64,000 bases of DNA from positions 46,624,001 to 46,688,000 of the forward strand of contig NC_083229.1 of NCBI RefSeq assembly GCF_032191835.1, in the 5' to 3' direction. Shown here piece by piece: positions 365-57,500 of this stretch (its first letter is position 1; each line of letters starts with the position of its first letter). Source of the DNA: Heteronotia binoei (Eukaryota). The notes beneath the pieces were generated by a model, which saw nothing but the letters and a program-made list of their open reading frames with translations, searched no databases and was not told where the DNA came from. A program made the translations under genes and the position numbers.

Positions 365-370
<6 letters not shown>

Positions 371-418
<48 letters not shown>
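371..418. repeat. (CA)24 microsatellite
   Basis: Uninterrupted CA dinucleotide run. Confidence 0.97.
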
Positions 419-429: not shown

Positions 430-1240
430 ACAAGCAATCAAGAGACTAAGAAAATAGAGGTTATCGATAGAGGAATTCAAGGGTTGTTGAAGCCGGTAAT
501 ATTCACCTGATCCAGAAGAGGAGATGTCTGTTCAATGGGAAGTACATGAAGAGAAACGCGAATGACCAGCGTAACGCGTCCTATAGACCCAGTTACAGGA
601 GTAACGGGTGGTACAGACTGCAAATGGCACCCTACAGAATGCACACCGAGGTGGGTTTTTGACCCATACTATATTGGGGTTCGACGGATGGGGGTCGTTA
701 GTTAAAAGGGGCTTTGATGTACCATAGATGGCTATCTTGAATTGCTATGTTGGGAAACATCGCACATTTTGCTAGGATGATAAGCTGGAGGGGCTGCTTA
801 ATTTGTTACGGGGGTTTTGGCTGACACTTGGAAAAGGGATCAAAGACCTTTAAGGGTAGGATCAATCAAGTTATGCATTTGATTGGATTTAGCAAGGTAG
901 AGGTGATAGACTGAAGGAAGAGACAATTGGCAAGAAGCGGACGATCAGAGTGAGAGTAGTATTTATCCACAGTTCCCATGTTATTATGCATCCCATTTGG
1001 GTGGAGGCACTAGAGGGGGAATGGGTGAGATTATGCTGAGAGACAGACTGCAGGCACCAACCAAAACAAGCTCTCTACTGGGTCCACTCCACCTGTTTAG
1101 ATGGAGTGTTTTCTTGACCTGTCTTTGGTTGGATTCCATTTTGTTTAACAGAAGTAGGAGACCCTCTCTCTTTATTTGCACTGGGGTACTCCATTTTATC
1201 AGGCAGTGCCTCTCAATAACATTCAGAATCATCTTTTGGC
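430..1240 (-). mobile_element. Possible decayed LTR-retroelement/ERV remnant (integrase C-terminus followed by env-like sequence)
   Basis: The minus strand reads ...KKTLHLNRWSGPSRELVLVG..., resembling the RWxGP(Y/F) integrase C-terminal motif. Stop-interrupted Cys/Trp-rich frames follow, and some CpGs are retained. Weak, by-eye similarity only. Confidence 0.25.
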
Positions 1241-4200
1241 AGAATGGTGCATCATGAACTTGTGGATCCAAGATCTTTCTGATGTAAACCATGACCATGA
1301 TATGTGATATGATGGGGGTATTGGGGTGATCCAACGCAAAACCCCCAAAGATCAATGAGGATCCATGGAAAAACATGTTTTTACAGCATGGCTTCTCAAA
1401 GAGAGTGTGGATGTATGATTTTTGTGGCACAAGTTGTACCATGGGTATGATATGTGATTTGATGGTGATGTTGTGCTAAATTCAAGAAAACCCCAGAGGA
1501 TCCATGGGGATTCATGTTTCAAAACCATGTTTTGGCTCCATGGTGCTGCCATGAAGCCATGAATTCATGATTTCTGTGGTGCAAACTCTGTCCATATACA
1601 TGATATGTGATTGGATGGTGAGCCTGGAGGGATCCAAGGCAAAAATCATGAGGATCTGTGGTTCAAAACCAAGTTTTAGGTACATAGTGCTGCCACAAAA
1701 CCATGGATCCACAATTTTTGAGATGCAAACTCTGCCCATGGACATGATATGTAATTGGATGGTGGGCTTGGGGGGATCCAAAGCAAAAATCATGAGGATC
1801 CATGAGAATCCGTGGTTCAAAACCATGTTTTGGCTCCATGGTGCTGCCATGAAACTGTGGATCCACAATTTCTGTAGTGCAACCTCTGCCCATGGACAAG
1901 ATATGTAATTGGATGGTGGATTTGGGGGGATCCAAAGCAAAAATCATGAGGATCCATGGTTCAAAACCAAGTCTTTACCCTAGAGTGTTGCCATGAAGCC
2001 GTGGATCCATGATTTCTGTGGTGCGACCTCTGCCCACGAACATGATATGTGACTGAATGGTGGGCTTGGGAGATCCAAGGCAAAAATCATGAGGATCCAT
2101 GATTCAAAACCAAGTTTTTGGTCCATGGTGCTGCCACGAAGCCATGGATCCATGATTTCTGTGGTGCAACCTCTGCCCATGGACATGATATGTGATTGGA
2201 TGGTGGGCTTGGGGTGGCCCAAAGCAAAAATCATGAGGATCCGTGGTTCAAAACCAGGTTTTTGGTCCATGGTGGTGCCACGAAGCTGTGGATCTATGAT
2301 TTCAGGGGTGCAAGCTCTGCCCATGGACATTATATATGATTGGATGGTGGGCTTGGGGGAATCGAAAGCAAAAATCATGAGGATCCATGGTTCAAAACCA
2401 AGTTTTTGGTCCATGGTGCTGCCACGAAGCCATGGATCCATGATTTCTGTGGTGCAACCTCTGCCCATGGACATGATATGTGATTGGATGGTGGGCTTGG
2501 GGTGGCCCAAAGCAAAAATCATGAGGATCCGTGGTTCAAAACCAGGTTTTTGGTCCATGGTGGTGCCACGAAGCTGTGGATCTATGATTTCAGGGGTGCA
2601 AGCTCTGCCCATGGACATTATATATGATTGGATGGTGGGCTTGGGGGAATCGAAAGCAAAAATCATGAGGATCCATGGTTCAAAACCAAGTTTTTGGTCC
2701 ATGGTGCTGCCACGAAGCCATGGATCCATGATTTCTGTGGTGCAACCTCTGCCCATGGACATGATATGTGATTGGATGGTGGGCTTGGGGTGGCCCAAAG
2801 CAAAAATCATGAGGATCCGTGGTTCAAAACCAGGTTTTTGGTCCATGGTGGTGCCACGAAGCTGTGGATCTATGATTTCAGGGGTGCAAGCTCTGCCCAT
2901 GGACATATATGATTGGATGGTGAGCTTGGCGAGATCCAAGGCAAAAATCATGAGGATCCATGGTTCAAAACTAAGTTTTTGGTCCATGGTGCTGCCACGT
3001 AGCCATGGATCTATGATGTCTGTGGTGCAAGCTCTGCCCATGGACATATGTCAGATGTGGCCAGCGGTAGCATGGGCAATGGCTGGGGATGATGGGAGTT
3101 GTAGGCAAAAAACATCTGGAGAGCTACTGTTGGCCATCCCTGTGATATGTGATTGGATGGTGGGCTTGGGGTGGCCCAAAGCAAAAATCATGAAGATCCA
3201 TGAGGATCTGTGGTTCAAAACCAAGTTTTCGGTCTAGGGTGCTGCCGTGGATCTATGATTTCCGTGGTGTAAGCTGTGCCCATGAACATTATATATGATT
3301 GGATGGTGGGCTTGGAGGCATTCAAAGCAAAAATCATAAGGATCCATGAGGATCTGTGGTTCAAAACCAAGTTTTCGGACTATAGTGCTGCCATGTAGCC
3401 GTGGATCCAAGATTTCTGTGGTGCAACCTCTGCCCATGGACATGATATGTGATTGAATGGTTAGCCAGAGGGGATCCAAAGCAAAAATCATGAGGATTCA
3501 TGAGGATCTGTGCTTTGGAAACATTTTTTTTCCACTGTTGTGGCACCACTGATTCCTGGAGGTATGATTTTTATGGTGCTGCCTATAGTCTAAGACAGAA
3601 TCTACAGCATGATGGTGGTTTGATTTCATTTCACCGTAAAAAAATCATGAATTCATGAGGATCCGTGCTTTGGAACGCTGTTTTTGCACTGGTGAGGTGC
3701 CATAAATCCGTGGAAGAATGATTTTTGTGGTTCTGCCTATAGTCTATACAGGATCTACAGAATAATAGTGGTTTTATTTCATTTCAATGTAAAAATCATA
3801 TGAATTCATGAAGATCCGTGTAGATCCGACTTTTACCTTTTTCCTTTGTGGAGCAAGCTTTGCCCATGGAAACGATATGGGATTGGATAGTGAAGTTTGG
3901 ATGGCTCGAAGCAAAAATTATGAGGATCCATGCTTCCACACTGTTTTCGCTCCACGGTGTTGCCACAAAGACGTGGGTCCACGATTTTTGTGGTGTAATC
4001 TCAGCCCATGGACACAATATGCAATTGGATGGTAAGCTTCAGGTGGCCTGAAGCAAAAATCGTGAGGATCGGTGCTTCAAAACCTTGTTTTGGCTTCATG
4101 GTGCTGCCACGAAGCCATAGATCTGTGATTTCTGTGGTGCAAGGTCTACCCATGGACATGATGTGTGATTTGATAACGAGCCCAGGGTGACTCAATGCAG

Positions 4201-4826
4201 AAATCATGAGGATCTGCGCTTCATAACCATGTTTTTGCTCTATGGTGACGCCACAAAGCCGTGGATGTGTGATTTCTGTGGTGCAAGCTCTCTCCATGGA
4301 CAGGATATGTGATTGTATGGTGGGCTTCCAGTGACCCAATGCAGAAATCATAAGGATCTGTGAGGATCCATGCTTCAAAAGCATGTTTTTGCTCTGTGCT
4401 GCTGCCATGAACCTGTGGATCCATGATTTCTGGGGTGCAAACTGTGCCCATGGACATGATATAAGAATTGATGGTGACTTTTGGGGGATCCTTAGAAAAA
4501 ATCATAGGGATCCATGAGGATTCATGCTTTGGAAGCATGTTTTTTTTCCACTGTTGTTGTGCCAAGAATTTGTGGAGGCATGATTTCTCTGTTGTTGCCT
4601 ATAGTCTAAGACATGGTCTACAGCATGATGTTTTGATTTCTTTTCCGCATAAAAATAATAGGAATTCGTGAGGATCCATGCTTTGGAACCGTTTTTGCAG
4701 TGGTGTGACGCCACGAATCATGGAGGCGTTATTTTTGTGGTGCTGCCTATAGTCAAACATGATCTACAGTATGATGGTGTAAAAATCATTTGAATTCCTG
4801 AAGATCCGTGTAGATCCGACTTTTCC
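1240..4826. repeat. Tandem array of ~24 monomers of ~144 bp with a homogenised 288-bp dimeric core
   Basis: The anchor gcaaaaatcatg recurs at 1639, 1783, 1937, 2080, 2224, 2368, 2512, 2656, 2800, 2941, 3181, 3327, 3481, 3911, 4053, 4197 and 4341, mostly at 144-bp spacing. Flanking units are degenerate. Confidence 0.95.
3052..3142. mobile_element. Internally deleted palindromic hAT-type MITE inserted in the array
   Basis: Ends are cagatgtggcc...ggccatccctg. The right flank tgatatgt duplicates monomer sequence; the left copy lacks 3 nt. Same family as the half-element at 19276-19337. Confidence 0.75.
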
Positions 4827-4899
4827 TTATTTCAAACCAGGGTTAACCAGCGCTAACTGGTCTGCTTCCAGTCCCAATCTATCTGGGCGCAAAATGCTT

Positions 4900-5660
4900 G
4901 ATTCCGTTATGCATCTTGGCATTTTGATACAAGTGCACAGAAGTGTTGTGTCCCCTGGCTCTTATTCCTTAGCAGGAACCACCGACGGCCTGGGGTCCCC
5001 CCACTCCACGAGGCATGCCTTGTTTTGCGCGGGGCGGCCCTCCCTCCCTGTTAAAAGTTGCCGGTCACTGTCACCAGTAGCTAGTCCCCCCTCCACGCCA
5101 TGGGAGCGCAGCCGTTTTGGTATCACAATAATTTCAATGGGTTTACGCACGAGTAACCCTGCACAACCGTAATAAATACACTCCCCAATCACGGCCGAGC
5201 ATCACGCACTTAACAGCTCCAAAATACCCAACGGGGCGGAGCTTCTTAGACCGGGACTTCCCACTTTCTGCGTTTGAAGACGCATTCAGATGACGGAAGT
5301 CACTTGCGCAGCCGCACGTGGAGCAATAGGAGAGTTCGGGAGTTGGGTGAGTTTGGAGTCGGGGAATGAGAGTGAGGCTGTGGGGAGGACGGAGTCCGCT
5401 AAATGGAGGATGCAAGACGTCCCTTTAAACTGCACGTAGTGTAATGGGCTGTGGGGATTATTATTTCTTCTCCGGAATCACAGCGTCCCTAAGCTGCTCC
5501 AGCAACTTCGATGGGCGGCCATTAGCCGTGATAACTAAATGGAACCTCCGCGTACAGAGGCAGTGTGCCTCTGCAAACAAGATGCTAAGCGCAAACAGTG
5601 GAAGGCGGGTTTGTGCCTCCAGCCTTCGTTGCCGTGGGCTGCTGGGAAACGCTACACTTA
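4900..5660 (+). promoter_or_regulatory. RBIS: CpG island promoter and probable non-coding exon 1 of RBIS
   Basis: CpG-dense. GC box GGGGCGGAG 5233-5241, TGACGGAAGT (CRE-half/ETS) 5291-5300, E-box CACGTG 5315-5320, strong donor G|GTGAGT after 5346. Confidence 0.75.
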
Positions 5661-6284
5661 GATGGACCTTTGGGCTGATCCAGCAGGGTGCTTTAACCGC
5701 TTATGTATGCTTAACAGCCCTACAGACCTTGTGAACTTTCCCCAAAGGTTTGCATTGGATTGAATATGGAGAGTAGTCCTTGCCTAGTTGTTTGACATGG
5801 CTCGTAGGAACGTAATTTTAACCTGCACATATCTTTGAGGACTTCCAGTGTTAAGGCTGAATACGTGTTGTAAAGGAGAAACAAATACACAGTCTAACTA
5901 TGAAGCAGAAACGTGCCACACCTGGTTCAAATAAAGGTCTAGAGATTGTGAGTTTTAGGAACTCCCTTCTCTCATCGTTCTTCCTACCCTTTCTTTGCAT
6001 CTTCTCTGTTTAACAAGAAGCCAGGGCTACAAAAGCACAGTGCTTCCACTGTGTAATGGCCTACCTGGATCTTTTGCCTTTAAAAAAGAATCTGCGTTGT
6101 AATGGCAGTGATTGTTTTGTCATGTAGTGTTGAACATCACTTTAGATTGAGTTTTAGTAGTTCTATGATTTGTAGATTCTTGTCTCAGTCTCTTGGATTA
6201 GGCAAACCACTATTTCATCCCAACCCCATCAGTTTGGGAATAATGCTCTCCTGCTTTATGGGGTAGTTTTATGAAGGCTATTGC

Positions 6285-6893: not shown

Positions 6894-7007
6894 ATGGGCA
6901 AGAGCAAAGGAAAAGGACAGAAGCAGAAGAATGTATTCCATGTGGCCAACAAAAACATCACAAAGGCAAAAAGTAAAGCCAAGCCAGTGACAACCAGTCT
7001 GAAAAAG
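6894..7007 (+). CDS. RBIS: RBIS coding exon 1
   Basis: Acceptor tttag before 6891, ATG at 6894, donor AAG|gttagt. Confidence 0.93.
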
Positions 7008-8456
7008 GTTAGTACAAGTGAACATCTTTGAATTCTTCATGGTCACTGATATACTTGGTCAGCACTTTGCTTGTTTAATGGAATCTATCTTATTACATAA
7101 CAGGCAAAGTAGTGAAGTACTGATGATTCCCCACCTTCCATTGAACTTGATTCTTTTCCTGATGCAGGAATTGGGAGAGATGCTCAAAACTGAATTTTAG
7201 AATTATCTAAGACCTTTTTTTTTTTTACACAAACCAAGGCTGCTTTCAGAGTTAAACCCACTGAACAACCAAAAAAAATGCCCTCCATTCCCTAGAAGCA
7301 ATATTCCATTTCTGTTTGGGTAGACTGGCAGTTTCAACTTACTGACCAATGCTTTCTGCCAAACCTAATCCTCAGTTCTTAACACTGTGAATAAATGTTT
7401 TTCACCCCTGGTTTATGCTTATGCTAATATTCATATTTTGAACTTTTCCTCAGATTCTGGTACTATTCAGTAAGGGCAAGGAGTTGTCTCCCCACACTTT
7501 AAAAGTGACTTTGTCTGATTCCCTTTGACAGACACACCAACTGTCTGGCTACTGACTCATCAGAGAGGACGAACAGCCCCCAAAGACCTTTTTCCTCAGC
7601 ACTCAGCTGCTCTTAAAGTTCTCCTCAGCAGGCACTGACCAATCAAAGATAAGAGGCAGCAGCCTGTCAGTCAAACTCTGCATTACACTGGGACATTCTT
7701 TACCTCTTAGCTCTCTGAAATTGCTGCACTAGGGGACCTGTTTTATGCACAATCCGTCAAACCTGCATTTTTATTCTCTTGAACACCTTACCTATTAATT
7801 GACAAGTCTGCCAATGTAAGAAAGGTCATATTAAATGTTAATAATAATAATAATAATAAAATTTTATTTATACCCTGCCCTCCCCACCGAGGTAGGCTCA
7901 GGGCAGCTTACAGAGTGTGGCAAAAGCCATGTTAAACAATAAAACAATTATACATTCAGTACCATTTAAAATTACCATTAAATTTACATAATATAAAAAT
8001 CTAAAATCAATCTAAAATAATCTTATCTTATGAAACCTGAAATAAACACCATGCCATCACTAACATCAACATCAACAATTGAGTTAGCAATAAGATAAAT
8101 GTTTCCTATTTAGAACCTCTTAAAGCTGTTTTCATGTTCAAGTGTAAAAGTTGTGTGTCTTTTCTTCTTTTCCCAAAGATCAATATAGTGAATGATGAAA
8201 AGGTTACCATGGTAAATAAGATATTTACACAAGTACAGAAAGAAGTCAAGCAGTTATCCAAAGCCGCTTCATCAGATCCACCCAAAAGGCATCTGGTAAC
8301 TTCATTAACTATTATTATTATTCAATCTATAATCTGTGACTTTTTGTTTTTAAAATGCCTGTTTTTTAATTTCACTTTTCAATTTAGATCCAAGAGTCCC
8401 CAGAAAGAGAACCACCTAATGTGGATGCTGCTACCAACTTATTGTCTCATCTGTAG
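6894..8456 (+). CDS. RBIS: Ribosomal biogenesis factor (C8orf59 orthologue), 99 aa; join(6894..7007,8179..8295,8388..8456)
   Basis: MGKSKGKGQKQKNVFHVANKNITKAKSKAKPVTTSLKK / INIVNDEKVTMVNKIFTQVQKEVKQLSKAASSDPPKRHL / IQESPEREPPNVDAATNLLSHL*. GT-AG introns, all phase 0. Matches recalled human RBIS and its position tail-to-tail with E2F5. Confidence 0.93.
8179..8295 (+). CDS. RBIS: RBIS coding exon 2
   Basis: caaag|ATC...CTG|gtaact; 117 nt. Confidence 0.93.
8388..8456 (+). CDS. RBIS: RBIS coding exon 3 (terminal)
   Basis: tttag|ATC...TAG; NVDAAT motif; AATAAA at 8663-8668. Confidence 0.9.
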   Translation: MQESPEREPPNVDAATNLLSHL

Positions 8457-18200: not shown

Positions 18201-21200
18201 ATGCTTTGCTGTAACCACAATTTCTGCTGATCCAGCTCTTTTTCTTTTAGTTCCAGATCTTCAATCTCTGCCTCAAGATACCTTAATCGATCTACAATTT
18301 CCTTTGTATTGCAGCCAGCACTTACACCTCTTTAAAAGAAACACAAAAATGCAATACTATTATAAATGAACAATGTGGAATCAAAAGGATTAAAATAGCA
18401 TAGTAAGAAGGTTATGGGCTGAATCTTACACACCTCCAGCAGAAGGTTCCAGGAGGGTGGCTTCCTTCCTGCCTTCCCCTATCAGCCTTAAGACGTAATG
18501 TCAGTCGGCTGGGCAACTCATATGGACAAAACATCACACAACATGGGTAACTGCAGTGCGAGCATGCAACTGGTGTAATTTATTTATTATTTATTTTGTT
18601 TTATTTATATCCTGTCCTTCCTGCAGATGGGCTCAGGGAGGATTACACAAGTCAATTCAGCAAATGTAGTGACTGTAATATACAAATAATTAGGTTAAAA
18701 TAGTTACAAGAGGTTTAAAACAGTTTAAAAACTGTTTTTGTTAGGGCATCAGATGACTAAATATGATTGCCTTGTAGATGATGCTATAATGAGAAACTCA
18801 TCTAGAGGAGTCACTAGATGTTTAATCACTGAACACATCTCTGCGTTGCAGGGAAAGCCCGGATGTCCGTCGCCTCAGCCAAAGGCCTGGCAGAACAGCT
18901 CCATATTTATTTATTTTATTAATTTTATTTTATCTAATTTATATCCCGTCCTCCCCTAGCGGGGTCGGGACAGCTATTACAGGCCCTGCAGAACTGTAAC
19001 AGGTCCTGCAAGGCCCTGATCTCAAATGGGAGCATGTAAGTGACCCTCTCCGCATTTCACAGCAGCAGTTATCACTAGCATAAACATTACCAACAAAGAG
19101 ACAGGGAATGCAATTTTGCCACTTCTCTCCCCACCTGTGCTATAGGGCTTATTTTCCACATGGATTCCCCAGCTCCTACCATTGGGGAGAGATCAAAAGG
19201 GGCTACCACAGGAGGGGTAATGTGAAAAAAAAATCATTTTCACCAGTGCATAGAATTCAGTCTATTAATTTCATGCAGGGGTGGCCAACGGTAGATCTCC
19301 AGATGTTTTTTGCTTACAACTCCCATCAGCCCCAGTCATAGTATTTAAGCAAGGGACAAAGCAATACTTTTTCCTTTAAAAAAAATGAACATTATTATAG
19401 TGAGGGTGAGGCATTAGGTTTGAATAGTATGCCCTGAGTTGAAGTACAATGACATTTTGATTCTATATGGAAAGATACTAACTGGAACAACGTCTATGAG
19501 CTCCTTGTTTCTACTACTTCAACAGAATACCAGAGAGGCATTAACTTTCACAGCTACAGCCTCATTTTCTTATTTAACAGTAACAGCAGCTTAGAAAATA
19601 CTATGTTCATGCTTCAACTACTATTCTTCTGTGTTACTTAAACTTGTACACATTTATTTGCTTATCTCCTTTGCTAGCAATAAAGTGGAGCAGGGAAGTA
19701 ACTAGTATCAAAAAGGCAAATGAGATAGGTAACTGTAAAACTGAGTCCATCTTCCTCAACAGGGCTCAAAGTGGATTACACAGAACAAGTCCTTGCATTC
19801 TGCAGGGTGGAATAACCAATAGATAGTGCTATAAAAATAAGTTGCAAAAGCTTTCCATGTTGCACCACCAACATTTAATTGTACATCCATTTGTGGTCCT
19901 CAAAACAGCCCACTAGCTCCCTCATATGGCTCTCCTCCTTATGGTCCACCCAATCTTACTAAATGGGAAATTAGCTGCTACATCCGGTCAACTCCTCTGT
20001 GCTTCAGGTTTTCCACATGCATAAAAGGTCGCATGGAAGGCCAATGGTCCCAATATTCCCCTTTTTTGTGACCTGCCATACTCACATTTCATGCTGAAGT
20101 GCTTCATTCTCCAAGATTAAATAGGTTTTGCAAGCACTAGAGGATGGGCCATGGCTCAAAGGTAGAAACTCTGCTTGGGGTGCAGAAGGTCCCAAATTCA
20201 ATCCCTGGCATCTCCAGCTAAAAGGTTAGGCAAGTAGGTGATGCAAAAGACCTCTACTTGAGACCCTGGAGAGCTACTGTGAGGCTGAATAGTTGATACT
20301 GACCGATGAGCCAATGGTCTGATTTGGTATAAGGCAGTTTCATCCATTCATATGTATTAAAGATACCTGAAGTTTAGGAAACTGGACTGAAATTAAACAA
20401 TATATATTCAAGATGGCCCACTGACAGCCCATAGGTTAGCCCTGACCTCTAAGACTTTGTCAATCCTAACACATATCAAAATATGATAAGAGGTCTGATG
20501 ACAACTTCACTTGCAACAACAACAAAACCATTATTTTCAAAACTGCAAAAGGCAAAGATAATCTACACTCTATTATCATATCTCTTCAGTGAAGCAGGGC
20601 ACAAAATTTTCCAATTAGATCTAGCCCTTCTGTAATGCAAAATTTTCTGATGCTGTATTTTTTCCATGGAAAATTTTCATCATTGCAAGTCTGTTTATTT
20701 GTAGTTGTCAGGGCTGTTGTGCTGCAGAGCAATCATACTGAACGGGCGAAAAGCATAATATGAAATATAGACAAACCCCAGTTCTTGTACATCATTCAAG
20801 CTTGTGCATGGTATATTTATCTTCTTTTGCTAAACTGATAAGTTATATTTGAATCACACCAAAAAAAAATCCCAAAAGTTTTAGCTATTCAAATTTTCCA
20901 AGAAAACCCAAAATCACTGCAGTTGTTTTTTTTTTAGTTTTTTAATGGAAAGATCTGGGTACATTGAAAGAATGCGCCACATAACTGTGAATCTCTTATT
21001 ATCATTACTATACAGCCTGACTTCCAGGGAAGGAATCTGTCTGTGGCAAATACACTTCCAGCTCTTGAGTAATTTTCTTAAAATGAAAACACAAAAAGAA
21101 ACCAGCAACAGTGGTACCCAAGATACAGAACTTTGCCATCATTGACATATCTTTTCACATACCAAAATGTCTAACTGTTCCAGCTCAAAAGAAACAGGTC

Positions 21201-26619: not shown

Positions 26620-26835
26620 GGTCTTTATATCCTGCTTTTCTCTACCCTAAGGAGTCTCCAAGCAGCTCGCAATCGCCTTTCCCTTCCCCTCTGCTCAACA
26701 GGCACCTTGTGAGGCAGGTGAAAGTTCTATGACTGGCCCAATGTCACCCAGCAGGCTTCACATGAAGGAAGGTAGAATAAAACTCAGACCTTCAGATTAG
26801 AATCTGCAGCTCTTAACTACTGTACCACTATGGCT
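26620..26835 (-). mobile_element. Older Squam3-like SINE
   Basis: Degenerate reverse-complemented Squam3 body. Confidence 0.65.
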
Positions 26836-27869: not shown

Positions 27870-30800
27870 CTGAAATTAAATTTAAAGATGCTATAAATAG
27901 CCTTCTTTTGAATTTTGATGTATCACTACACTCAATGTTGCTGTCTTGAGAAAGCAAATGTCAATTATATACTATTTCACTATTAATGAAACATTTTTCT
28001 TGCTAGCTTTTCCCTAACAGTATGAATCTATAGAATACATTTCCCCTTCCCAAAGTTTTATAGAACGGAAGGCAAAGCTCTGACATCAGCTGAAGACAGT
28101 ACAGTGCTTGAAGGCATGAAAATGTGGCGGTATTCTCATCCAACTGTATGTGAAAAGCCTATCCATAATAATAAGCTTCCCCACCTGTTCAAAGTCTATT
28201 ATATTAAAAGGTTCACTTTGTTAGTTAAATGTGCATTTAAAGACCAGAGTTAACTAGAAAGATAATGTAACAAAATAACCTCTCCTTTAAAATTAAACAC
28301 CCAATACTAACACATTTGGTACAGCACTAATTTACTGTAACCTCTCAACATTTTCCTAATTAATCATGTTTTACAGGGCTTTCAAAAGATCTGTAAAGTT
28401 TTCACCCTCTGTTGGAAACAAATTCCACAAATTCAAAGTCATAACTTCAGTATCTGGAGCAAGTATACATCTGTAACAACCCCAGCAGCTGAGTGACACT
28501 TAACTCAACTACAGTTTACCAGCCAACAAAAATCCTAACTGACTTTCTTATTTAGCTGAGGGATGAGAAGGTGAACTGCATAGTTGAACATCTTCAGAGT
28601 TATCTATCACCTTTTCATTTGCTGCTACGATTTGCTGTTGTTTTTCATTTGCTAACTGCAGTAGTTCTGCTTGATGACTTGCTAAAGTTGATTCAAGTTG
28701 CCTTCTGAAAGCATCATCAACAGAATGAAGCTTTTCCATTGTAGCCCTAAACACAAGAGGAAACTTTAAATCTTTTCAATAACACTGCAATACTGTATCA
28801 ATACTAAAGAAAAAAATGTATTACACACACATCATAAATTACATTCAAGAATATTCCGTTTCTGTGGGTGCATTGTAGTAACTTGTCCATGCCTCAGACA
28901 TTATTCTTAACAATGTTTATGGTTGCAGCATTGTTTGTGAAGCAGCCTCACTTTGAAAACTTTGTGTTTATGCAGTAAAGAAGAGAGGAAAATAATGTGA
29001 GGAAGAAAACAAATTTGAATGTTTATCAATCATCTAGAGAAAAATTTACAAAAAACATCAGCTTTTACTACAGGAATGTTCACTTGACACTATGATCAAG
29101 ATGCTGTTGTACTGGACTGTAAAATTCCTGAACCTGCCTACTTTTCCAAATTGGGGTGGTGGTGGTACAACACCAGAAACTTATTGAATTCCAGCAGATA
29201 AACTTTATGTCCAAATTAACCATACTGGAAATTCATAATGTGCTGAACAAAGTGAAAGAATTCCTATCTCTAAAAGTAAAAAGTGGCCCTTTTTAATTTC
29301 CTGCTTAACAAGCCAACTGTTAGCACTTTTTACTAACCCCCATTCCCTATATGTCTAGTTTATGCTTGATTCTGCAAACTGGATAAACCTCCAGAGTTGA
29401 AGCAGTCTCATTGTTCTTCTGAGGCAAGGCCTCATCTCAAGCTTCAGGGTTTTCCCCAAATCATAGGGAAAAAAGACACACACATTAACACATTTTCTAT
29501 TTACTTCTGAGTTTGAAGACTTTTGTCTCTTTCTTCAATCAGGCGTTTCTCCTTTATATCAAAATTTTCTTTCATTTGTTTAACCTGTGCTTCCAGCTTG
29601 CTTAATAATCCTCCTTTATCTTGCCACTTCTTATTCATTGCACTGAAACAAATGGGCATGATCAGAATGGCTTCAAAAATTATTCACATTAGTGCAAAGA
29701 AAACATTTTCCTTACTTTACGAGCATTAAAAGTGCTTGTAAAGTGCATGTAGGATCATAAGCATGTTTCCCAGCTCATTTCAATATAGTCTGCACCAGGG
29801 GTGGAATTCTAGCAGGAGCTCCTTTGCATATTAGGCCACACACCACTGATGTAGCAATCTTCCAAGAGCTTACAAGGCTCTTTTTTGTAAGCTCTTGGAG
29901 GATTGGCTACATCAGGGGTGTGTGGCCTAATATGCAAAGGAGCGCCTGCTAGAATTCTACCCCTGGTCTGCACACTACACTTGACTTTAGCCAAAAGGCA
30001 GAGAAAGCACAATTTTGAGATTCTTTCACTCCAAAGGGGGACCCTATGTACCTGCTGCACTGAAGCTTTTTCAACCAAAGTAATAATTCAACTTCTCTAT
30101 GGCACCTTTTTTTGTATTTGGGCCGCTAGTCTACATTCCTTTGAAAAAATGCAATCTTAATTTCTTTGTGGCATTTACAGGTCCCCCTTGGTGTTCCTAA
30201 CTCCCTTCTTCACTTAGAAACATAGAATCACAGAGTTGGAAGGGACCTCCAGAGTCATCTAGTCCAACCCTCTGCACAATGCAGGAAACCCACAAATACC
30301 TACCCCAAATTCACAGGATCTTCATCGCTGTCAGATGGCCATCTAGCCTCTGTTTAAAAACCTCCAAGGAAGGAGAGCCCACCACCTGAGGAAGCCTGTT
30401 CCACTGAGGAATCGCTCTAATGGTCAGGAAGTTCTTCCTAATGTTGAGCTGGAAACTCTTTTGATTTAATTTCAACCCATTGGTTCTGGTCCTACCTTCT
30501 GGGCCACAGAAAACAATTCAATACCATCCTCTATATGACAGCCCTTCAAGTACTTGATGGTGATTATATCACCTCTCAGCCACCTCCTCTCCAGGCTAAA
30601 CATGCCCAGCTCCTTCAACCTTTCCTCATAGGACTTGGTCTCCAGACCCTTCACCATCTTTGTCACCCACCTCTGGACCTGTTCCAGCTTGTCTATATCC
30701 TTCTTAAAATATGGTGCCCAAAACTGAACACAGTACTCCAGGTGAGGTCTTACCAGAGCAGAGTAAAGCGATACTATCACATCACATGATCTGGACAATA

Positions 30801-39800: not shown

Positions 39801-42800
39801 AGTTAGAAGTCAACAGGAAAATGCTCAAAGTTCAGGAGACGGGGCTGTAAATAATTTAGTTTGGCAGATCATTAATCTGTAGAAGCAAACACAACCTTCT
39901 ATGTACAGAAGCCCCATACTGCCATGACTCTGGCATTTATTCACCTTCTGCATTGCTGCACTCAAGTTGTAGAGGTGATTGTAGAGAAACTTTTCAGTTC
40001 TGAGCTACTTATAAAGTATCTTATATTATGGTGACTTGGCTCATTCTGTGATTTCACACAAGCAAAGACAACAAAACATTTGAAAGTGGTCACAAAATTC
40101 AGCAAGTCTATTCTATTTTTCTTTAAAGAAGAAAACAAGTTTCTGGCCCTCTTTAATAGTAAAAGTGTACCATTCACCTCATTAATGGTGAACTCCCTTA
40201 AATGTACATAAAATAAGTCTAATGGCTACAGCTGCAATCCTAACGACATCTTCCCGGAAGTTAGTCCCACTAAAAACCTTAGGAATTATTTCCAAATAGA
40301 GCTGCTATGGCTCAGTAGAATACCCTAGGCTCAATCCCCACCATCTCAAGTTAAAAGATCTGGCAGTAGGTGATGTGAAAGACCTCTGCCTGAAACCCTG
40401 CCAGTCTGATTAGACAATATTGACTTTGATAGACCAAGGGTCTGATTCAGTATAAGGCGATTTCATGTGCTTAGCATCACTACCAATTCCCACAGATCTG
40501 AATGGACAAAACTTTATTTAAAAAGGGTAAAATAAAGAATCCTCTTGTTCTGAGTAAACATATTTTTGTGTTTACTTTTTACAAAATATTATTTACATGC
40601 TGGTTCCTAACCTGTCTGTAGTGTATACAGCCATGCTTTGAATATCCTTTTCTTCTTTTGCATGGCTCTGCAACTCTTTGATATTTTCTCTCAGTTTCTT
40701 TTCAGCTTGTTCAGCTTTCCACCTCCTCTCACGCTCCTGATCCAGTTCTTGAATCAGTGCCTGAATAAGAAGGAAAACCATCAGATTACAGCACAAGTGA
40801 AACTACAAATACAGAACAATTTGATTATTCTCTTGCATCTGTAGCAAACCTTCCTTCCCCCCACCCCCAGTGTCCTAAAACTAGAGCTGTAATACATTTA
40901 TCTCCTAGGGAGAATGAAAATACATGTACATCAGTCTTCTTATTAACGGCAAAACATTTATTTTTCACTTGGCAGTATTAGAATAAAAGGCAGTGAGTAG
41001 CCAAGACGGAAATGTATTCTGGGATGTCTAACTATGAAGCCATATAAAGTAAAGAATTGATATTGGAATTTTCAGTAATACAGACAATTAGAGTCTGGTT
41101 TGCATCAGTACATTTTGGGCTGTAAATGGAGGCTTTGCACCTCTCTAAAGAAATAGAGAGAATAGCAGAATAGAGGCTGGACTGCTGATAAAAAGTCTAC
41201 AACAATAAATTTTTCTCTTTGAAATGACAGCTTTCAGTTGGCATTAAATGTTTTGTATCATTTAATCATGGGAACTCCCTATTTGCTATATGTGTATAAT
41301 CCTGGTGAAAATTGAACCCAAATTGTAAAAGTTGTAAAAAGGTGAAGCTTCAAGTGATGCTATGAAGTGCCATAGCACATATATTTGGACGTAAAGAACC
41401 CCAAGAAACAGCTGAAAAACAGCAAGAACTGAGCTTATTAGGAAGTTGTTTGGGGCTGAAACAGGCAACCAAGCCAGTAAGGGTTAGGAAACAACTTGCT
41501 AGAAAACTATTATTGTCAGGACAAATTCGATTCTTTAAAAATCCTCATACATGGGTTTCTGCTTAACAGTATGCATTATTAGATATTTGTGCCTGTTTAT
41601 TTCATTATATCAGTCCCATTAACAGATTTCTTTTGTATGTGAAGCAGAGAGAGCTTAAGAAACATCTTTTCACTAAAAGAACAGAAGAACCCAGATAGTA
41701 ACATGAAATCGGCATAGTAGATGCTAGAATGTGAAAATCAGCTTTGCTGTCAAGAACAGAAGATGAGGTGTGAGGTTATTGGTTTAACAAAATCAGAGAC
41801 TAGTTGTGTTATCTGCACAAAAAAAGAAAGAAAGAAAAGTGCTTCAGAACTAGTTAAATGTAAATAACAACTCAGGACCTTAAACAAGCAGGTCAGATGG
41901 TAGACACAGAAAAATAGTTTTTTATATTCTGTTTTTCTTTACCTGAAAGAGTCTCAAAGCAGCTTACAACCACATTCCCTTCCTTTCCCCACAACAGGCA
42001 TCTTGTGAGGTAGGTGGGGCTGAGAGAGTTCTGAGACTTGCCCAAGGTCACCAGCAGGCTTCATGTGGAGGAGAAGTGGAGAATCGAACCTGGTTTCCCG
42101 ATTAGAGTCCACTACTCTTAACCACTACACCACATCAGCTCTCAACAACACTCTGGGTCTCAAAAAAAGGCACTGAACTATAGCATGATTCCCAAATTCT
42201 CTCTCTGCATCTTAATCTATGAGGCTCTTGGAAATCTTATATTTGTATTGTATTACAAGAAGTATCAGCCCCCTAACACTATAAAGACAGTTTTGTTCTG
42301 AAGTTGTTCTCATTTTCTTTTGTTCAAACTAATGCTAGATTTACTGCAGATCTCTGAAAACTAAGCAGTCATTATCTCAGACCAAAAAACCAGAAGTACC
42401 TTGTAAGTTGACTCTTCTGGAATACTTGAATCTAAACTTTTTAGTTTTTTCACTGGACTCTTCCGCCCAGTCATCAATTTCTTGGGTGATTTCCCCACTA
42501 CTTCCAGACTTGGTACATCAGAAAGTAAACTGGAATCTTCTTCCTCTTTGACTTGAGCATCTAATTTTTTTGATTTTATAGAAGCCCGCTCTTCTCTACT
42601 AAAATGACACAGAAGTTTATGATCACACTGGAATACATATATTCTTTGTACAAAGAGAGTTAACTTTATGGGTGAGAACAAACTGAGAATGGGGTGTGTG
42701 CACAGACCCATGTACAACAAAAAGAGAGATAAGAATCTCCTCTTCAAGCATTGTACCTTCCTGGTATGGGGCACCATAAGCAACTTTTTGCTAACTGAGC

Positions 42801-49952: not shown

Positions 49953-50084
49953 NNNNNNNNNNNNNNNNNNNNNNNNNNNNNNNNNNNNNNNNNNNNNNNN
50001 NNNNNNNNNNNNNNNNNNNNNNNNNNNNNNNNNNNNNNNNNNNNNNNNNNNNNNNNNNNNNNNNNNNNNNNNNNNNNNNNNNNN
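49953..50084. other. Assembly gap (132 N)
   Basis: Run of N following a G-rich L2 3' end. Confidence 0.99.
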
Positions 50085-53783: not shown

Positions 53784-54501
53784 ATGGGGGAGGACCTCTG
53801 CGATCCATCTAAAGGAAGAAATGAAGTCAGTGAGATGCGGCTCAAAAAAACCATTGGATATTTTGAAGGGGTTAGCTTTATAATGGGTACGATTGTAGGA
53901 GCAGGGATCTTTGTATCCCCTACTGGGGTACTGCAATACTCTTTACTCAATGTTGGTGTTGCCTTGATCATCTGGACGATCTGTGGTGTCATATCTCTGA
54001 TGGGCGCTCTCTGTTATGCAGAACTAGGCACTGCTTTACCATTGTCGGGAGGAGAATACAGCCACATAAAGAGAGCCCTTGGCTCTCCTCTTGCTTTCAT
54101 TTTTATGTGGACAGCACTGTTCAATAAACCAGCATCAAATGCTGCTCGGGCCTTGCTGTTTGCTGAATATGCAATCCAGCCTTTCTACGGTGAATGCCAG
54201 GCTCCAGAAGTGCTGAAGAAAGGTTTAGCTCTGGCTGTTCTCTGGTTTCTTGGAATCCTCAATGGCCGAAGTGTCAAGATGGCTACTTGGGTGCAGACCG
54301 TTTTTACCATACTGAAAATGATGGCGCTGTCTGTAATTGCAATTAGCGGGATTGTCCTGCTGATAATAGGAAGGAAAGAGAATGTAGCAAGATTTGAGAA
54401 TGTTTTTGGTGCAGAGGTTCCAGATGCTGGTCAGATTGCAGAAGCCTTTTTCCAAGGACTTTATGCATATGGTGGCTGGTGGTCTCTCAATTATATGGCA
54501 G
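53784..54501 (+). CDS. SLC7A13: SLC7A13-like exon 1
   Basis: aacATGg; donor GCA G|gtataa. Confidence 0.9.
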
Positions 54502-57500
54502 GTATAACTCTCTTTTTTTTCTGCTTAGGGCAACCACATTTATTTATCCAAGCATATTTATTTATCCAAACACTCTACTGAAATAGAGCTACCTGCTAGG
54601 TGCTGGCTAAATTCTTGCCTTACCACAGACTTAATAGTTGTGCTGAGTAGTTCCATGTTAGGTCAATTCAGGGTGAGTTCAGGCCATGTGAAACTTCTCT
54701 TGTATTTTACAAGCTGTGCATTTATATGCAGGGTAAAATATTTTATCTTGCATGGGACAATGCTTCTGTTATTCACTGTGCTGAAGATATATTTCTAATA
54801 ATTCCAGCGCTTAAACTGTATGTGTGGAAGCAATATAGAAAATGGTTATTTTCTCTTTATTTCATTGACAGATAAATTTTGTAACCAAGCTTTCTCCCCC
54901 TGTATTAGCGCTATCAGAAATAAATGTAGATGCATGTATTCTGTAGATGTTTGATGCAAGTGTATTGTAGGATTCAAGACCTAAGGTACATACCTGTGGT
55001 TATATATCTTCTTTCAGTAGTGGCCATGATCCAGAGTTTCAGCACTCACATACAAATTTTCTGCAGTGGATATCCTAGCACTACATTATTTTTGGTTCCT
55101 GAAAAAGGTCCTCAAAAAGGCTTTGCCAGTGACTAGAGAATCTACCATAGTCCCTGTTTGTATCAAATCTCTGTATGAAGCTGACATCTGCTAGTCTGTG
55201 AGGTATATAGTCAGTATTTGTGTGATAAAGAGTCTTCTAAATTTTATATTCCAGAGGAGATGAAAAACCCAAGCAAAAATATTCCAAGGACTGTGATGAC
55301 TGCACTTCCTTTAGTGACTGCATTTTACTTGCTGGTAAATGTTTCATACTTGACAGTTCTCACACCCAAGGAAGTTGTCTCCTCAGGTATGCTTAGCATG
55401 TCCGCTTCTGATTTTGGCCAGAGTATTGGGGGCAGGGATGTTTAAGTCTCCTACCCCTTTACAGAAAGTTATACAGTTTTTAAAATTCTGCACCTGTAAC
55501 CAATATACAGTAAAAATGATAAACTTGTCACTAGTGATTTGCAGAATGTTATTCTGTGCTTCTATGCTTTGTTTCTATTGCCTTTCTGTTTTTACACCTC
55601 ACACCTCTTCATTGCGGTCTCTGTCTTCACCACGTTCAAGTTATTCCTCACATTTACCGTCTTCATTCTCAGCTTCTTTGAACTCAGGCAAGTCATTTTC
55701 AGTCCCATTCATGGAATCTGAACTACAGTATTTATTAAACCCTTTATCTAGAACTCCTGGATTTATCCTATCCCTTGTTATGTTTTTTAATCCAATGAAA
55801 AAACAGTGTTGCACGAGGCTTCTTTATTGCACTGTAGGGGTTAAAACATGATTCCATCACCAAGAGCAATTCTGGCTATAAAGACCAGGGATGGGCACAA
55901 ACCTCATGATTCTAATTTCCTGACAAACATTGCTGGCTAGTGGTTTGCAAACTGGAGGTTCATGCCCATCCCTATCCATGATGCTCCCATGACCCTCCAC
56001 ATAGTTTCAGAGGTGCTTGGGGGTTCATGTTGGGAAGGGGGAAGATGCAAGAGGAATCACTGAAATGGCTTGCATCCATTAGATGCAAGCCATTTCAACT
56101 ATCTCTCGCCCCCCCAAGCATTCACTTTAAATGATTTTTGCAAGAAAAACATGAGTGAAGTCCTTCTTGCAGTACTGTTTTATTACCTCTTTTATTGTTT
56201 TAATGTATTTTGTGTTTTTATTGCTCTTCTTGCTGCTTTTTGTTTTTTTAAACTTGTTTCTGTGTGTTTCTATGCTGCTGGCTTTCTATTGTTTTATCTG
56301 TTGTAAGCCACTTGTACTATATTTTGTTGGGAAGGAAGGATATAAGTAGGATATAAGTTAATAAATGAACAGAGACTTGCTTGCTGATCCTGCAGTGTTT
56401 AACAAGTGGCAAGGCTGGCGAGCTGTTAGCACAAGTCATCTAATATTTTTGGTATTTCCTTGCAGTTGCTGTAGCAGTCACATGGGCTGACAGAGTGATC
56501 CCTTCAATTGCATGGATTATTCCTGTATCTGTGGCCATTTCAATATTTGGTGCCCTTAACAGCAGCATGTTTACACTGGGACGATTAAGCTATGCTGGGA
56601 GTCAGTCTGGACATTTGCCCACTATAATATCCATGCTTAATGTCCACTATTGGACTCCAGCGCCAGCCATGATTTTCTCAACCATTATTGCATCCATTTT
56701 TATTATCCCATCAGACCTAATTGCTTTAACCAGTTATTTTGGATTCTCTGTCTGGCTCATGATTGGATTTACGTGTGCTAGCCTGATTGTCCTTCGGTAC
56801 CGAGAACCTAATCTACACAGACCATACAAGGTAAAAGGGAATAAGTTAAAATATGTAATCAAAGTTTCTGAAAACATTTTATTGTGAATAATATGTGGGT
56901 CTTACAAACCTTTACAAGTTAGTTATGCCATGATAAATAGACTATTTCATTTAAACAAGCTTAGCACCACTAATATCAGTGATGCTGCAGCACTTCAGTC
57001 TCCAAATTTACAAACTCTTGGTGCTTAAATTGAATTATCCAAGGGATCTCAAAGAATAAAATAAGCCTCTTCAGGGGAATGCATGTGAGTATTAGGGGAA
57101 CAGTTTACTGTGATATTGTTACATGTTCCTCATTTCTTCAAATATTAGGAAGTACTGGAAGGAAGTACTTTCCTGTACTGGTTTCCTTTGGAGGATGGAT
57201 TACTGAGTCTTACAGCATTCCTGTAATATTTACTTTATTAGAAAATATACAAGTGGAGCACTGATGCAGGCGAAGAGGCATCCCCCAGGATAGGAGATCC
57301 ACTACTCCTCATCAGATTCACAGAGGGAAGTCCTGTCAGCAGATCTGTCTGCTTCCCTTGCTGCTTCTTCCCTCACAGAGGCATACCTCTCTCTCCATTC
57401 ACCTATGAGGGACCACTAGGCTTCCCAACCCTCCCGCCCTGGCGGGGGACCCCAGGATGTCCACCCTCTTCCCCCGCTCCCCAAAAAAATGGAAGTGGGG

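What the first reader, a model, noticed from the sequence alone, without database searches (positions are those of the whole stretch)
1240..4826. Hierarchical 144-bp / 288-bp satellite-like array abutting the RBIS CpG island
Seen: ~24 monomers. The core (2080-2940) is (A-B)x3, where A and B differ at 16 of 144 positions but the 288-bp dimers are nearly identical; I found one A/G difference between dimers 1 and 2 and a 3-nt deletion in the last B. Similarity decays toward both edges. Known: this monomer-to-higher-order-repeat gradient typifies satellite evolution by unequal exchange. Inference: a euchromatic, still-expanding seed of an undescribed gecko satellite or VNTR, ending ~500 bp from a housekeeping promoter and possibly affecting its chromatin.
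Basis: partly seen in the sequence, partly recalled or inferred. Interest (0 to 1): 0.75.

Follow-up and report, generated by a model that had tools for sequence, protein, structure and literature searches.

The report
Minisatellite array beside gecko RBIS promoter
A real 3.6-kb block of about two dozen head-to-tail copies of a 144-154-base non-coding unit lies about 470 bases upstream of the likely start of a gecko housekeeping gene (RBIS), and it looks like an ordinary, locally evolving repeat with no sign of a function.

Summary
Window 1222-4830 is one tandem array of 26 segments: 22 full or near-full units of 141-154 bp and 4 partial ones. Its core has perfect 288-bp (A-B) periodicity over 2080-2906, apart from one A/G mismatch (2102 vs 2390) and a 3-nt deletion. 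A and B differ at 16 of 144 positions.

The array is more structured than reported:
- The right side is a two-step pattern, because about 1 kb of the array's 3' edge was duplicated long ago (3846-4830 mirrors the end of 3145-3845; K2P 0.22).
- A 97-bp MITE-like element sits at 3048-3144.
- The 154-bp units carry a 10-bp internal duplication.

The unit is non-coding: no codon periodicity, no Pfam hit, no protein relatives. It is CpG-depleted, occurs nowhere else in the 64 kb, and shows no similarity to the Squam3-like SINEs or the CR1 3' end in this window. No flanking target-site duplication was found.

Best reading: a locus-specific minisatellite or VNTR-like array evolving in place by unequal exchange, with a recent dimer triplication.

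Not testable here: genome-wide copies, other geckos, read support for the perfect dimers, and any effect on chromatin. The scan has noted other tandem arrays in this genome, none with this unit.

The parts
1222..4830 (+). Whole tandem array: 26 segments (M01-M26) of a 144/154-bp unit
   Evidence: TRF, the repeat finder families D1-D8, nhmmer, MAFFT alignment of units
1222..2044 (+). Left, decayed units M01 (partial) to M06; 65-90 % identical to the core A unit; M03 (153 bp) and M05 (154 bp) carry the 10-bp insert
2045..3047 (+). Core M07-M13 with alternating A/B units. 2080-2906 is perfectly 288-periodic apart from one mismatch (2102/2390) and a 3-nt deletion at the end of M12
3048..3144 (+). 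Foreign 97-bp MITE-like insert with CAG...CTG ends and arms of about 20 nt in inverted orientation (15 of 20 by my own reading of the sequence). Its 3' 64 bp recur at 19276-19339 (-) with 91 % identity. It splits the array and is not copied into other units
3145..3845 (+). End module 1: M14 (B-like), M15 (A-like, 154 bp), then edge-type units M16, M17 and truncated M18
3846..4830 (+). End module 2: old duplicate of about 1 kb of the array's 3' edge. M19 (partial), M20-M23, then edge-type M24, M25 and truncated M26. M16~M24 77 %, M17~M25 79 %, M18~M26 89 %; K2P 0.22 over 3445-3845 vs 4459-4830
   Evidence: (D5, D7, D8)
4951..5700 (+). CpG-rich block (o/e 0.77, GC 0.55) with a GC box (5233-5242) and ETS-like GGAAGT sites (5253-5264, 5293-5300). 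Putative non-coding RBIS exon 1 ends at a GTGAGT donor (exon end 5346). The transcription start and exon 1 are inferred, with no RNA evidence
   Evidence: motif reading is my own
6894..7007 (+). RBIS coding exon (38 aa, includes the start codon)
   Evidence: Pfam PF15679 positions 1-38, E 2.5e-13
8179..8295 (+). RBIS coding exon (39 aa)
   Evidence: PF15679 positions 39-76; 74-84 % identical to RBIS-like proteins P0001 and P0003
8388..8456 (+). RBIS last coding exon (22 aa plus stop); read by eye, too short for Pfam

Best explanation
This is a non-coding, locus-specific minisatellite or VNTR-like array that arose and evolved in place upstream of RBIS.

Inferred order of events:
1. An old array of units of about 144 bp formed. 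Its outermost units stopped taking part in exchange and drifted: the edge-type units M16-M18 and M24-M26, and M01-M02 on the left.
2. About 1 kb covering the 3' edge and a few bases of flank was duplicated in tandem, possibly at a short T-rich microhomology. It has since diverged by about 0.22 substitutions per site.
3. A 10-bp slippage duplication (CATGAGGATC) created the 154-bp unit variant.
4. A small MITE inserted at 3048-3144.
5. An A-B dimer of two units differing by 11 % became the exchange unit. Older B-A copies (M14, M15) sit at about 91 %. The dimer was very recently amplified to about three copies (0-0.3 % divergence) by unequal sister-chromatid or homologue exchange, or by replication slippage.

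Shown: the anatomy, the identities, and the absence of coding signal.
Inferred: the order of events, the mechanism, and neutrality. The array core is CpG-depleted like bulk methylated DNA, while the neighbouring island is not. I take the array to be a passive neighbour of the promoter, not a part of it.
For: - Array and periodicities.
- Unit alignment and identity matrix.
- The 288-bp lag has one mismatch over 2080-2906; A and B differ at 16 of 144 positions.
- The unit tree puts the edge-type units in their own clade (100/99), shows a B clade that includes M14 (91/89), and pairs M17 with M25.
- K2P is 0.22 between the duplicated edges, 0.003 between dimers 1 and 2, and 0.09 for M14-M15 against B-A.
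- Both modules end in the same sequence, followed by different sequence.
- The MITE insert has a second copy elsewhere in the window.
- No copy of the unit or of the edge module lies elsewhere in the 64 kb.
- No target-site duplication flanks the array.
- Not coding: substitutions show no 3-base periodicity (p = 0.41); A and B differ at 10 of 48 codons in the open + frame (read); no Pfam family; no protein relatives for either strand.
- No Rfam family or tRNA.
- CpG o/e is 0.13-0.45 in the array against 0.77 in the island.
Against: - The genome outside this window could not be searched, so 'locus-specific' rests on one 64-kb window plus blanks from collections that do not hold gecko DNA.
- Two modules ending in the same terminal sequence could also be two copies of a mobile element with an internal array.
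- Other arrays in this genome were reported by the scan to ride on transposons or to derive from retroposons.
- The two arms of the internal inverted repeat are better conserved than the unit average: 15-16 of 17 pairs are kept in units only about 75 % identical to the core. This could hint at constraint.
- The copy number of the perfect dimers has no read support.
Confidence: 0.6

Rival explanations
1. The array belongs to a dispersed family: either the internal tandem region of a transposon (Helitron-, Maverick-, hAT- or LINE-type carrier) or one locus of a genome-wide gecko satellite. On this reading the two end modules are two element termini.
For: Both modules finish with the same 30-40 nt terminal sequence, which itself looks like three imperfect decamers of the type ATGAAGATCC. 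Unit sizes of 126-151 nt and loci of 4-60 units are typical of retroposon-derived satellites in geckos (PMC10702118). Scan notes report transposon-borne and retroposon-derived arrays in this same genome (these are unchecked leads).
Against: No second copy of the unit or the end module lies in the 64 kb. No target-site duplication or terminal inverted repeat surrounds the array or module 2. Alignment scores against the window's CR1 3' end and Squam3-like SINEs are no better than shuffled controls. By eye there is no resemblance to the published Squam2/Squam3 satellite consensuses. The junction between the modules falls inside a unit, as expected for a local tandem duplication.
Confidence: 0.25
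2. The array is a functional cis element of the RBIS promoter region: a repeated protein-binding platform, enhancer, silencer or boundary, or a copy-number-dependent modifier of methylation and expression.
For: It lies about 470 bp from the putative start site. The arms of a roughly 75-nt inverted repeat (AAATCAT..GGATCCATGG / CCATGGATCCATGATTT) are the best-kept part of the unit. Many units carry an inverted CCAAT core (TGATTGG; my own reading). In humans, promoter-associated tandem repeats can act as expression and methylation QTLs (PMC4857002; bioRxiv 10.1101/2020.12.16.423078; abstracts seen).
Against: Units diverge freely, down to 50-70 % at the edges. The hairpin is kept by sequence conservation with almost no compensatory changes, and its folding z-score is only -2.4. 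The CCAAT core is lost in about a third of the units. The CpG depletion looks like ordinary methylated DNA. There are no expression, accessibility or comparative data.
Confidence: 0.07
3. The perfect (A-B)x3 core is partly an assembly artefact, with the copy number over- or under-called. The older array around it is real.
For: 804 bp (2103-2906) are exactly 288-periodic, which is the kind of stretch assemblers can mis-size.
Against: The outer copies carry private differences: a mismatch at 2102 and a 3-nt deletion at the end. Older A/B-like units (M07, M13, M14, M15) flank the core, so a dimeric organisation exists independently. At 3.6 kb the array is shorter than typical long reads. No reads could be obtained.
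Confidence: 0.08
4. The array encodes a repeat protein of 48-residue units. Frames are open on both strands through the core (382 aa on +, 355 aa on -).
For: The ORFs; the unit length is divisible by 3; the deletion in M12 is 3 nt.
Against: The open frames reflect only 288 bp of independent sequence. Each frame of the unit has just 0-3 stops. Variability shows no codon periodicity (p = 0.41). A and B differ at 10 of 48 residues for 16 nucleotide changes. The 143-, 146-, 153- and 154-bp units break the frame. No Pfam family and no protein relatives.
Confidence: 0.01

Closest known systems
Large-motif minisatellites / VNTRs near promoters (as surveyed in human: PMC4857002; bioRxiv 10.1101/2020.12.16.423078)
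   Same: Single-locus head-to-tail array in gene-rich DNA, a few kb long, with a unit above 100 bp, internal homogenisation and a position next to a CpG-island promoter.
   Different: Copy-number polymorphism, the defining property of a VNTR, could not be tested. No expression or methylation data.
Satellite DNA with higher-order repeats (alpha-satellite-type organisation)
   Same: Unit close to nucleosome size (144-154 bp), a dimeric higher-order repeat that is far more homogeneous than its constituent units, and older diverged units at the array edges.
   Different: Only 3.6 kb at one euchromatic site. No evidence of a genome-wide family, of heterochromatin, or of a centromeric or subtelomeric position.
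SINE-derived satellites of squamates (sSat2/sSat3; Vassetzky et al. 2023, PMC10702118)
   Same: Gecko genomes; unit sizes of 115-151 nt; loci of 4-60 units; near-100 % similarity in long loci.
   Different: The unit shows no detectable similarity to Squam3-like copies in the window. By eye it does not resemble the published Squam2/Squam3 or sSat consensuses. Its GGTTCAAAACC stretch only loosely resembles a B box.
Tandem polymers of the CR1 3' hairpin and tail
   Same: The unit contains a long hairpin followed by a T-rich ...ATTTCTGTG stretch that recalls the CR1 octamer tail.
   Different: Alignment to the canonical CR1 3' end in this window (30180-30480, - strand) scores no better than shuffled sequence. 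No target-site duplication.

Membership tests
Minisatellite / VNTR | Head-to-tail array of units from 10 to a few hundred bp, 0.5-30 kb long, at a single locus | tested here: met
   3.6 kb with 144/154-bp units. It is the only locus in the 64 kb; the rest of the genome was not searchable.
Minisatellite / VNTR | Copy number varies among individuals | not testable with these tools
   No sequencing run was listed, so read laying could not be used.
Satellite DNA (strict sense) | Tandem units with higher-order periodicity | tested here: met
   The 288-bp lag has one mismatch in 2080-2906; A and B differ at 16 of 144 positions.
Satellite DNA (strict sense) | High genomic copy number: long arrays or many loci, usually heterochromatic | not testable with these tools
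   Only one 3.6-kb array was seen. Genome and reads were unavailable. The metagenome and paper string searches were blank, which is uninformative.
SINE-derived satellite (sSat) | Unit is a recognisable part of a Squam1/2/3 SINE | tested here: not met
   Squam3-like copies exist in the window, but the unit does not align to them above shuffled controls, and blastn/nhmmer hit nothing outside the array. Squam2 and Squam1 were compared only by eye with the published consensuses.
CR1 3'-tail polymer | Unit is the CR1 terminal stem-loop plus octamer tail, within one target-site duplication | tested here: not met
   No similarity to the CR1 3' end at 30180-30480. No target-site duplication. Other LINE families were not tested.
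Transposon-borne internal tandem array | Array bounded by element termini (inverted repeats, or a hairpin plus CTRR) and a target-site duplication, with further copies in the genome | tested here: inconclusive
   No target-site duplication or terminal inverted repeat was found and there is no second copy in the window. However, two modules share one terminus, and the genome could not be searched.
Coding tandem repeat | Open frame kept across diverged units, with substitutions biased to third codon positions | tested here: not met

The most novel reading that the evidence does not exclude
The 144-bp unit is the founder, or one member, of a so far uncatalogued gecko repeat family that spreads through a carrier element whose terminus is the shared end module. 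On this reading the RBIS-proximal locus catches it at the stage where a dimeric higher-order repeat is starting to amplify. Alternatively, the array has been retained beside this promoter for tens of millions of years because its conserved palindromic block binds a factor.
Probability: 0.12. Interest if true: 0.45.

Novelty: new member of a known kind. Interest (0 to 1): 0.2.

Why it matters
As it stands this is a tidy textbook example of how a tandem array layers itself. It has old, frozen edges, an old segmental duplication of one edge, a transposon insertion that marks a unit excluded from homogenisation, and a very young dimeric higher-order repeat in the interior. That makes it a convenient small locus for studying unequal exchange in a reptile genome, and a candidate copy-number marker. 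It would become more interesting only if the unit proves to be a genome-wide family, or if array length affects RBIS methylation or expression.

Tried and rejected
1. Coding repeat: rejected.
2. Structured RNA, tRNA or SINE head: Rfam gave only sub-threshold chance hits and ARAGORN found nothing.
3. Functional hairpin: the inverted repeat of about 75 nt is real. It is kept by sequence conservation with essentially no compensatory pairs, and the folding z-score is -2.4.
4. Squam3 or Squam2 SINE origin, and CR1-tail origin: no similarity above shuffles.
5. Transposon insertion with a target-site duplication: none found.
6. Read-based tests of depth, copy number and transcription: the look-up of sequencing runs listed no run, so read laying was never usable.
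7. Orthologous loci in other geckos. I searched RBIS exon by exon by reference; the joined spliced model was deliberately left out.
8. A metagenome scan for a 32-nt unit motif and a literature search for four unit strings were both blank.
9. The scan's own index gave nothing by sequence.
10. The assembly gap at 49953-50084 was left untouched.
Full report
**1. Observation**

TRF finds a period-144 array at 1503-3047 (10.7 copies, 85 % matches). It also reports adjoining rows of period 154, 153, 144 and 154 out to 4544 (repeated with a maximum period of 2000). The repeat finder groups 15-18 copies into families spaced 144 or 154 bp apart.

A profile HMM built from eight core units detects + strand units from 1222 to 4748. 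I cut the region into 26 segments, M01-M26, covering 1222-4830. Of these, 22 are full or near-full units of 141-154 bp. Four are partial: M01, M18, M19 and M26.

- At a lag of 288 bp, 2080-2906 shows one mismatch (2102 A against 2390 G) and then a 3-nt deletion at the end of M12.
- The A unit (2332-2475) and the B unit (2188-2331) differ at exactly 16 of 144 positions, 9 of them transitions.
- Ungapped identity in the core is 0.77 at lag 144 and 0.83 at lag 288, against about 0.32 one base off either lag.
- The unit occurs nowhere else in the 64-kb window by blastn or nhmmer.

**2.

(a) The A/B alternation is older than the perfect triplet. M07 and M13 are A-like (92-94 %), M14 is B-like (90 %) and M15 is A-like (91 %). 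So 2045-3444 is a dimeric domain with a young centre.

(b) The 153/154-bp units (M03, M05, M15, M16, M23, M24) and the 146-bp M14 carry a 10-bp duplication of CATGAGGATC.

(c) The right part is not a simple decay. M16-M18 and M24-M26 are a distinct edge-type unit, about 55 % identical to the core, that forms its own clade (support 100/99). They pair by position: M16~M24 77 %, M17~M25 79 %, M18~M26 89 %. Both modules stop in the same truncated unit with the same last 30-40 nt, after which the sequences differ. After module 1 the array resumes in mid-unit; after module 2 comes unique DNA. I read this as an old tandem duplication of about 1 kb that included the array's 3' edge. K2P is 0.22 over 3445-3845 against 4459-4830. 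The junction lies in a T-rich stretch that both partners share, which would suit a microhomology-mediated event, but at 80 % identity this is only suggestive.

(d) At 3048-3144 a 97-bp foreign piece interrupts the array between M13 and M14. Its ends are inverted (CAG...CTG; 15 of 20 nt by my reading). Its 3' 64 bp recur at 19276-19339 on the minus strand at 91 % identity and end at the same base. It is a small MITE-type insertion that has not spread to other units.

**3. What it is not**

- **Not coding.** Frames are open through the core on both strands (382 and 355 aa), but this reflects only 288 bp of independent sequence. Each frame of the unit has just 0-3 stops. Variability across 14 non-identical units shows no 3-base periodicity (permutation p = 0.41). 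A and B differ at 10 of 48 residues in the open + frame. Units of 143, 146, 153 and 154 bp break the frame. There is no Pfam family and no protein sharing words with either strand's translation.
- **Not a known RNA family or tRNA-like element**.
- **Not a functional hairpin on present evidence.** Each unit holds an inverted repeat of about 75 nt, with arms AAATCAT..GGATCCATGG and CCATGGATCCATGATTT. The pairs are kept in 15-17 of 17 positions even in units about 75 % identical to the core. This is through conservation of both arms, not through compensatory change, and the folding z-score is only -2.4.
- **Not derived from the retroposons tested.** Published gecko SINE-derived satellites have similar unit sizes (PMC10702118). 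The window holds Squam3-like copies and a canonical CR1 3' end (30180-30480, minus strand). Local alignment of the dimer and of the edge module to these scores no better than shuffled controls. The published Squam2/Squam3 consensuses show no resemblance by eye.
- **No sign of a transposon insertion.** No target-site duplication flanks the array or module 2.

**4. Context**

The array ends at about 4830. CpG o/e is 0.13-0.45 in the array and 0.77 in 4951-5700. It rises already in the last ~230 bp of the array, but on only 6-7 CpGs.

The block carries a GC box and ETS-like sites, and a GTGAGT donor follows position 5346. This is my own reading; the transcription start and exon 1 are inferred, with no RNA evidence.

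RBIS is confirmed. The exons at 6894-7007 and 8179-8295 match Pfam PF15679 at positions 1-38 and 39-76. Exon 3 is 74-84 % identical to RBIS-like proteins of 98-99 aa. The last exon (8388-8456) was read by eye.

**5. Most likely history and mechanism**

This section is inference from the anatomy. An old array formed in place and its edges dropped out of exchange and drifted. The 3' edge was duplicated long ago. A slippage event made the 154-bp variant and a MITE landed in the array. A pair of units 11 % apart became the unit of exchange and was very recently amplified to about three copies by unequal exchange or replication slippage.

With a neutral rate near 1e-9 per site per year (my assumption), 0.22 would mean tens of millions of years and 0.003 about a million years or less. 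Conversion among units makes both figures rough.

I see no evidence of function. The CpG depletion suggests the array is methylated like bulk DNA, next to an unmethylated island.

**6. Limits**

- 'Locus-specific' and the copy number of the perfect dimers therefore remain unverified.
- Scan notes on this genome describe transposon-borne and retroposon-derived arrays elsewhere. I used them as leads. The CR1 and SINE leads failed here. The carrier-transposon lead stays open at about one chance in four.
- None of those notes concerns this unit.

**7. Verdict**

This is a new example of a well-known kind of sequence.

Noticed in passing
window 3048-3144 and 19276-19339 (-): A MITE-like element of about 97 bp with CAG...CTG inverted ends is inserted in the array. 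A second, 5'-different copy shares its last 64 bp (91 %) and the same end point. A possible 6-8-bp target duplication around ATATGT is blurred.
   Followed up: partly
window 30180-30480 (-): Canonical amniote CR1 3' end: the GGACTAGATGA...GGTCC hairpin followed by ATTCTRTG-type octamers. It is unrelated to the array unit.
   Followed up: partly
window 26736-26748 (-) and 42040-42052 (-): Squam3-type SINE core motif (GGTGACCTTGGGC), indicating Squam3-like SINE copies in the window.
   Followed up: partly
window 53784-54581 (+), 56495-56884 (+): Long open exon-like frames.
   Followed up: partly
window 4600-4899: CpG o/e climbs to 0.7-0.8 within the last ~230 bp of the array, before GC content rises. 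The unmethylated shore of the RBIS island may therefore reach into the oldest units. This rests on only 6-7 CpGs per 200 bp.
   Followed up: no
window 370-418 and 49953-50084: A perfect (AC)24.5 microsatellite, and a 132-N assembly gap that was left untouched.
   Followed up: no
window 3790-3830 and 4780-4820: Both array termini end in three imperfect decamers of the type ATGAAGATCC, related to the 10-bp CATGAGGATC duplication that defines the 154-bp units. This points to a slippage-prone decamer inside the unit.
   Followed up: partly
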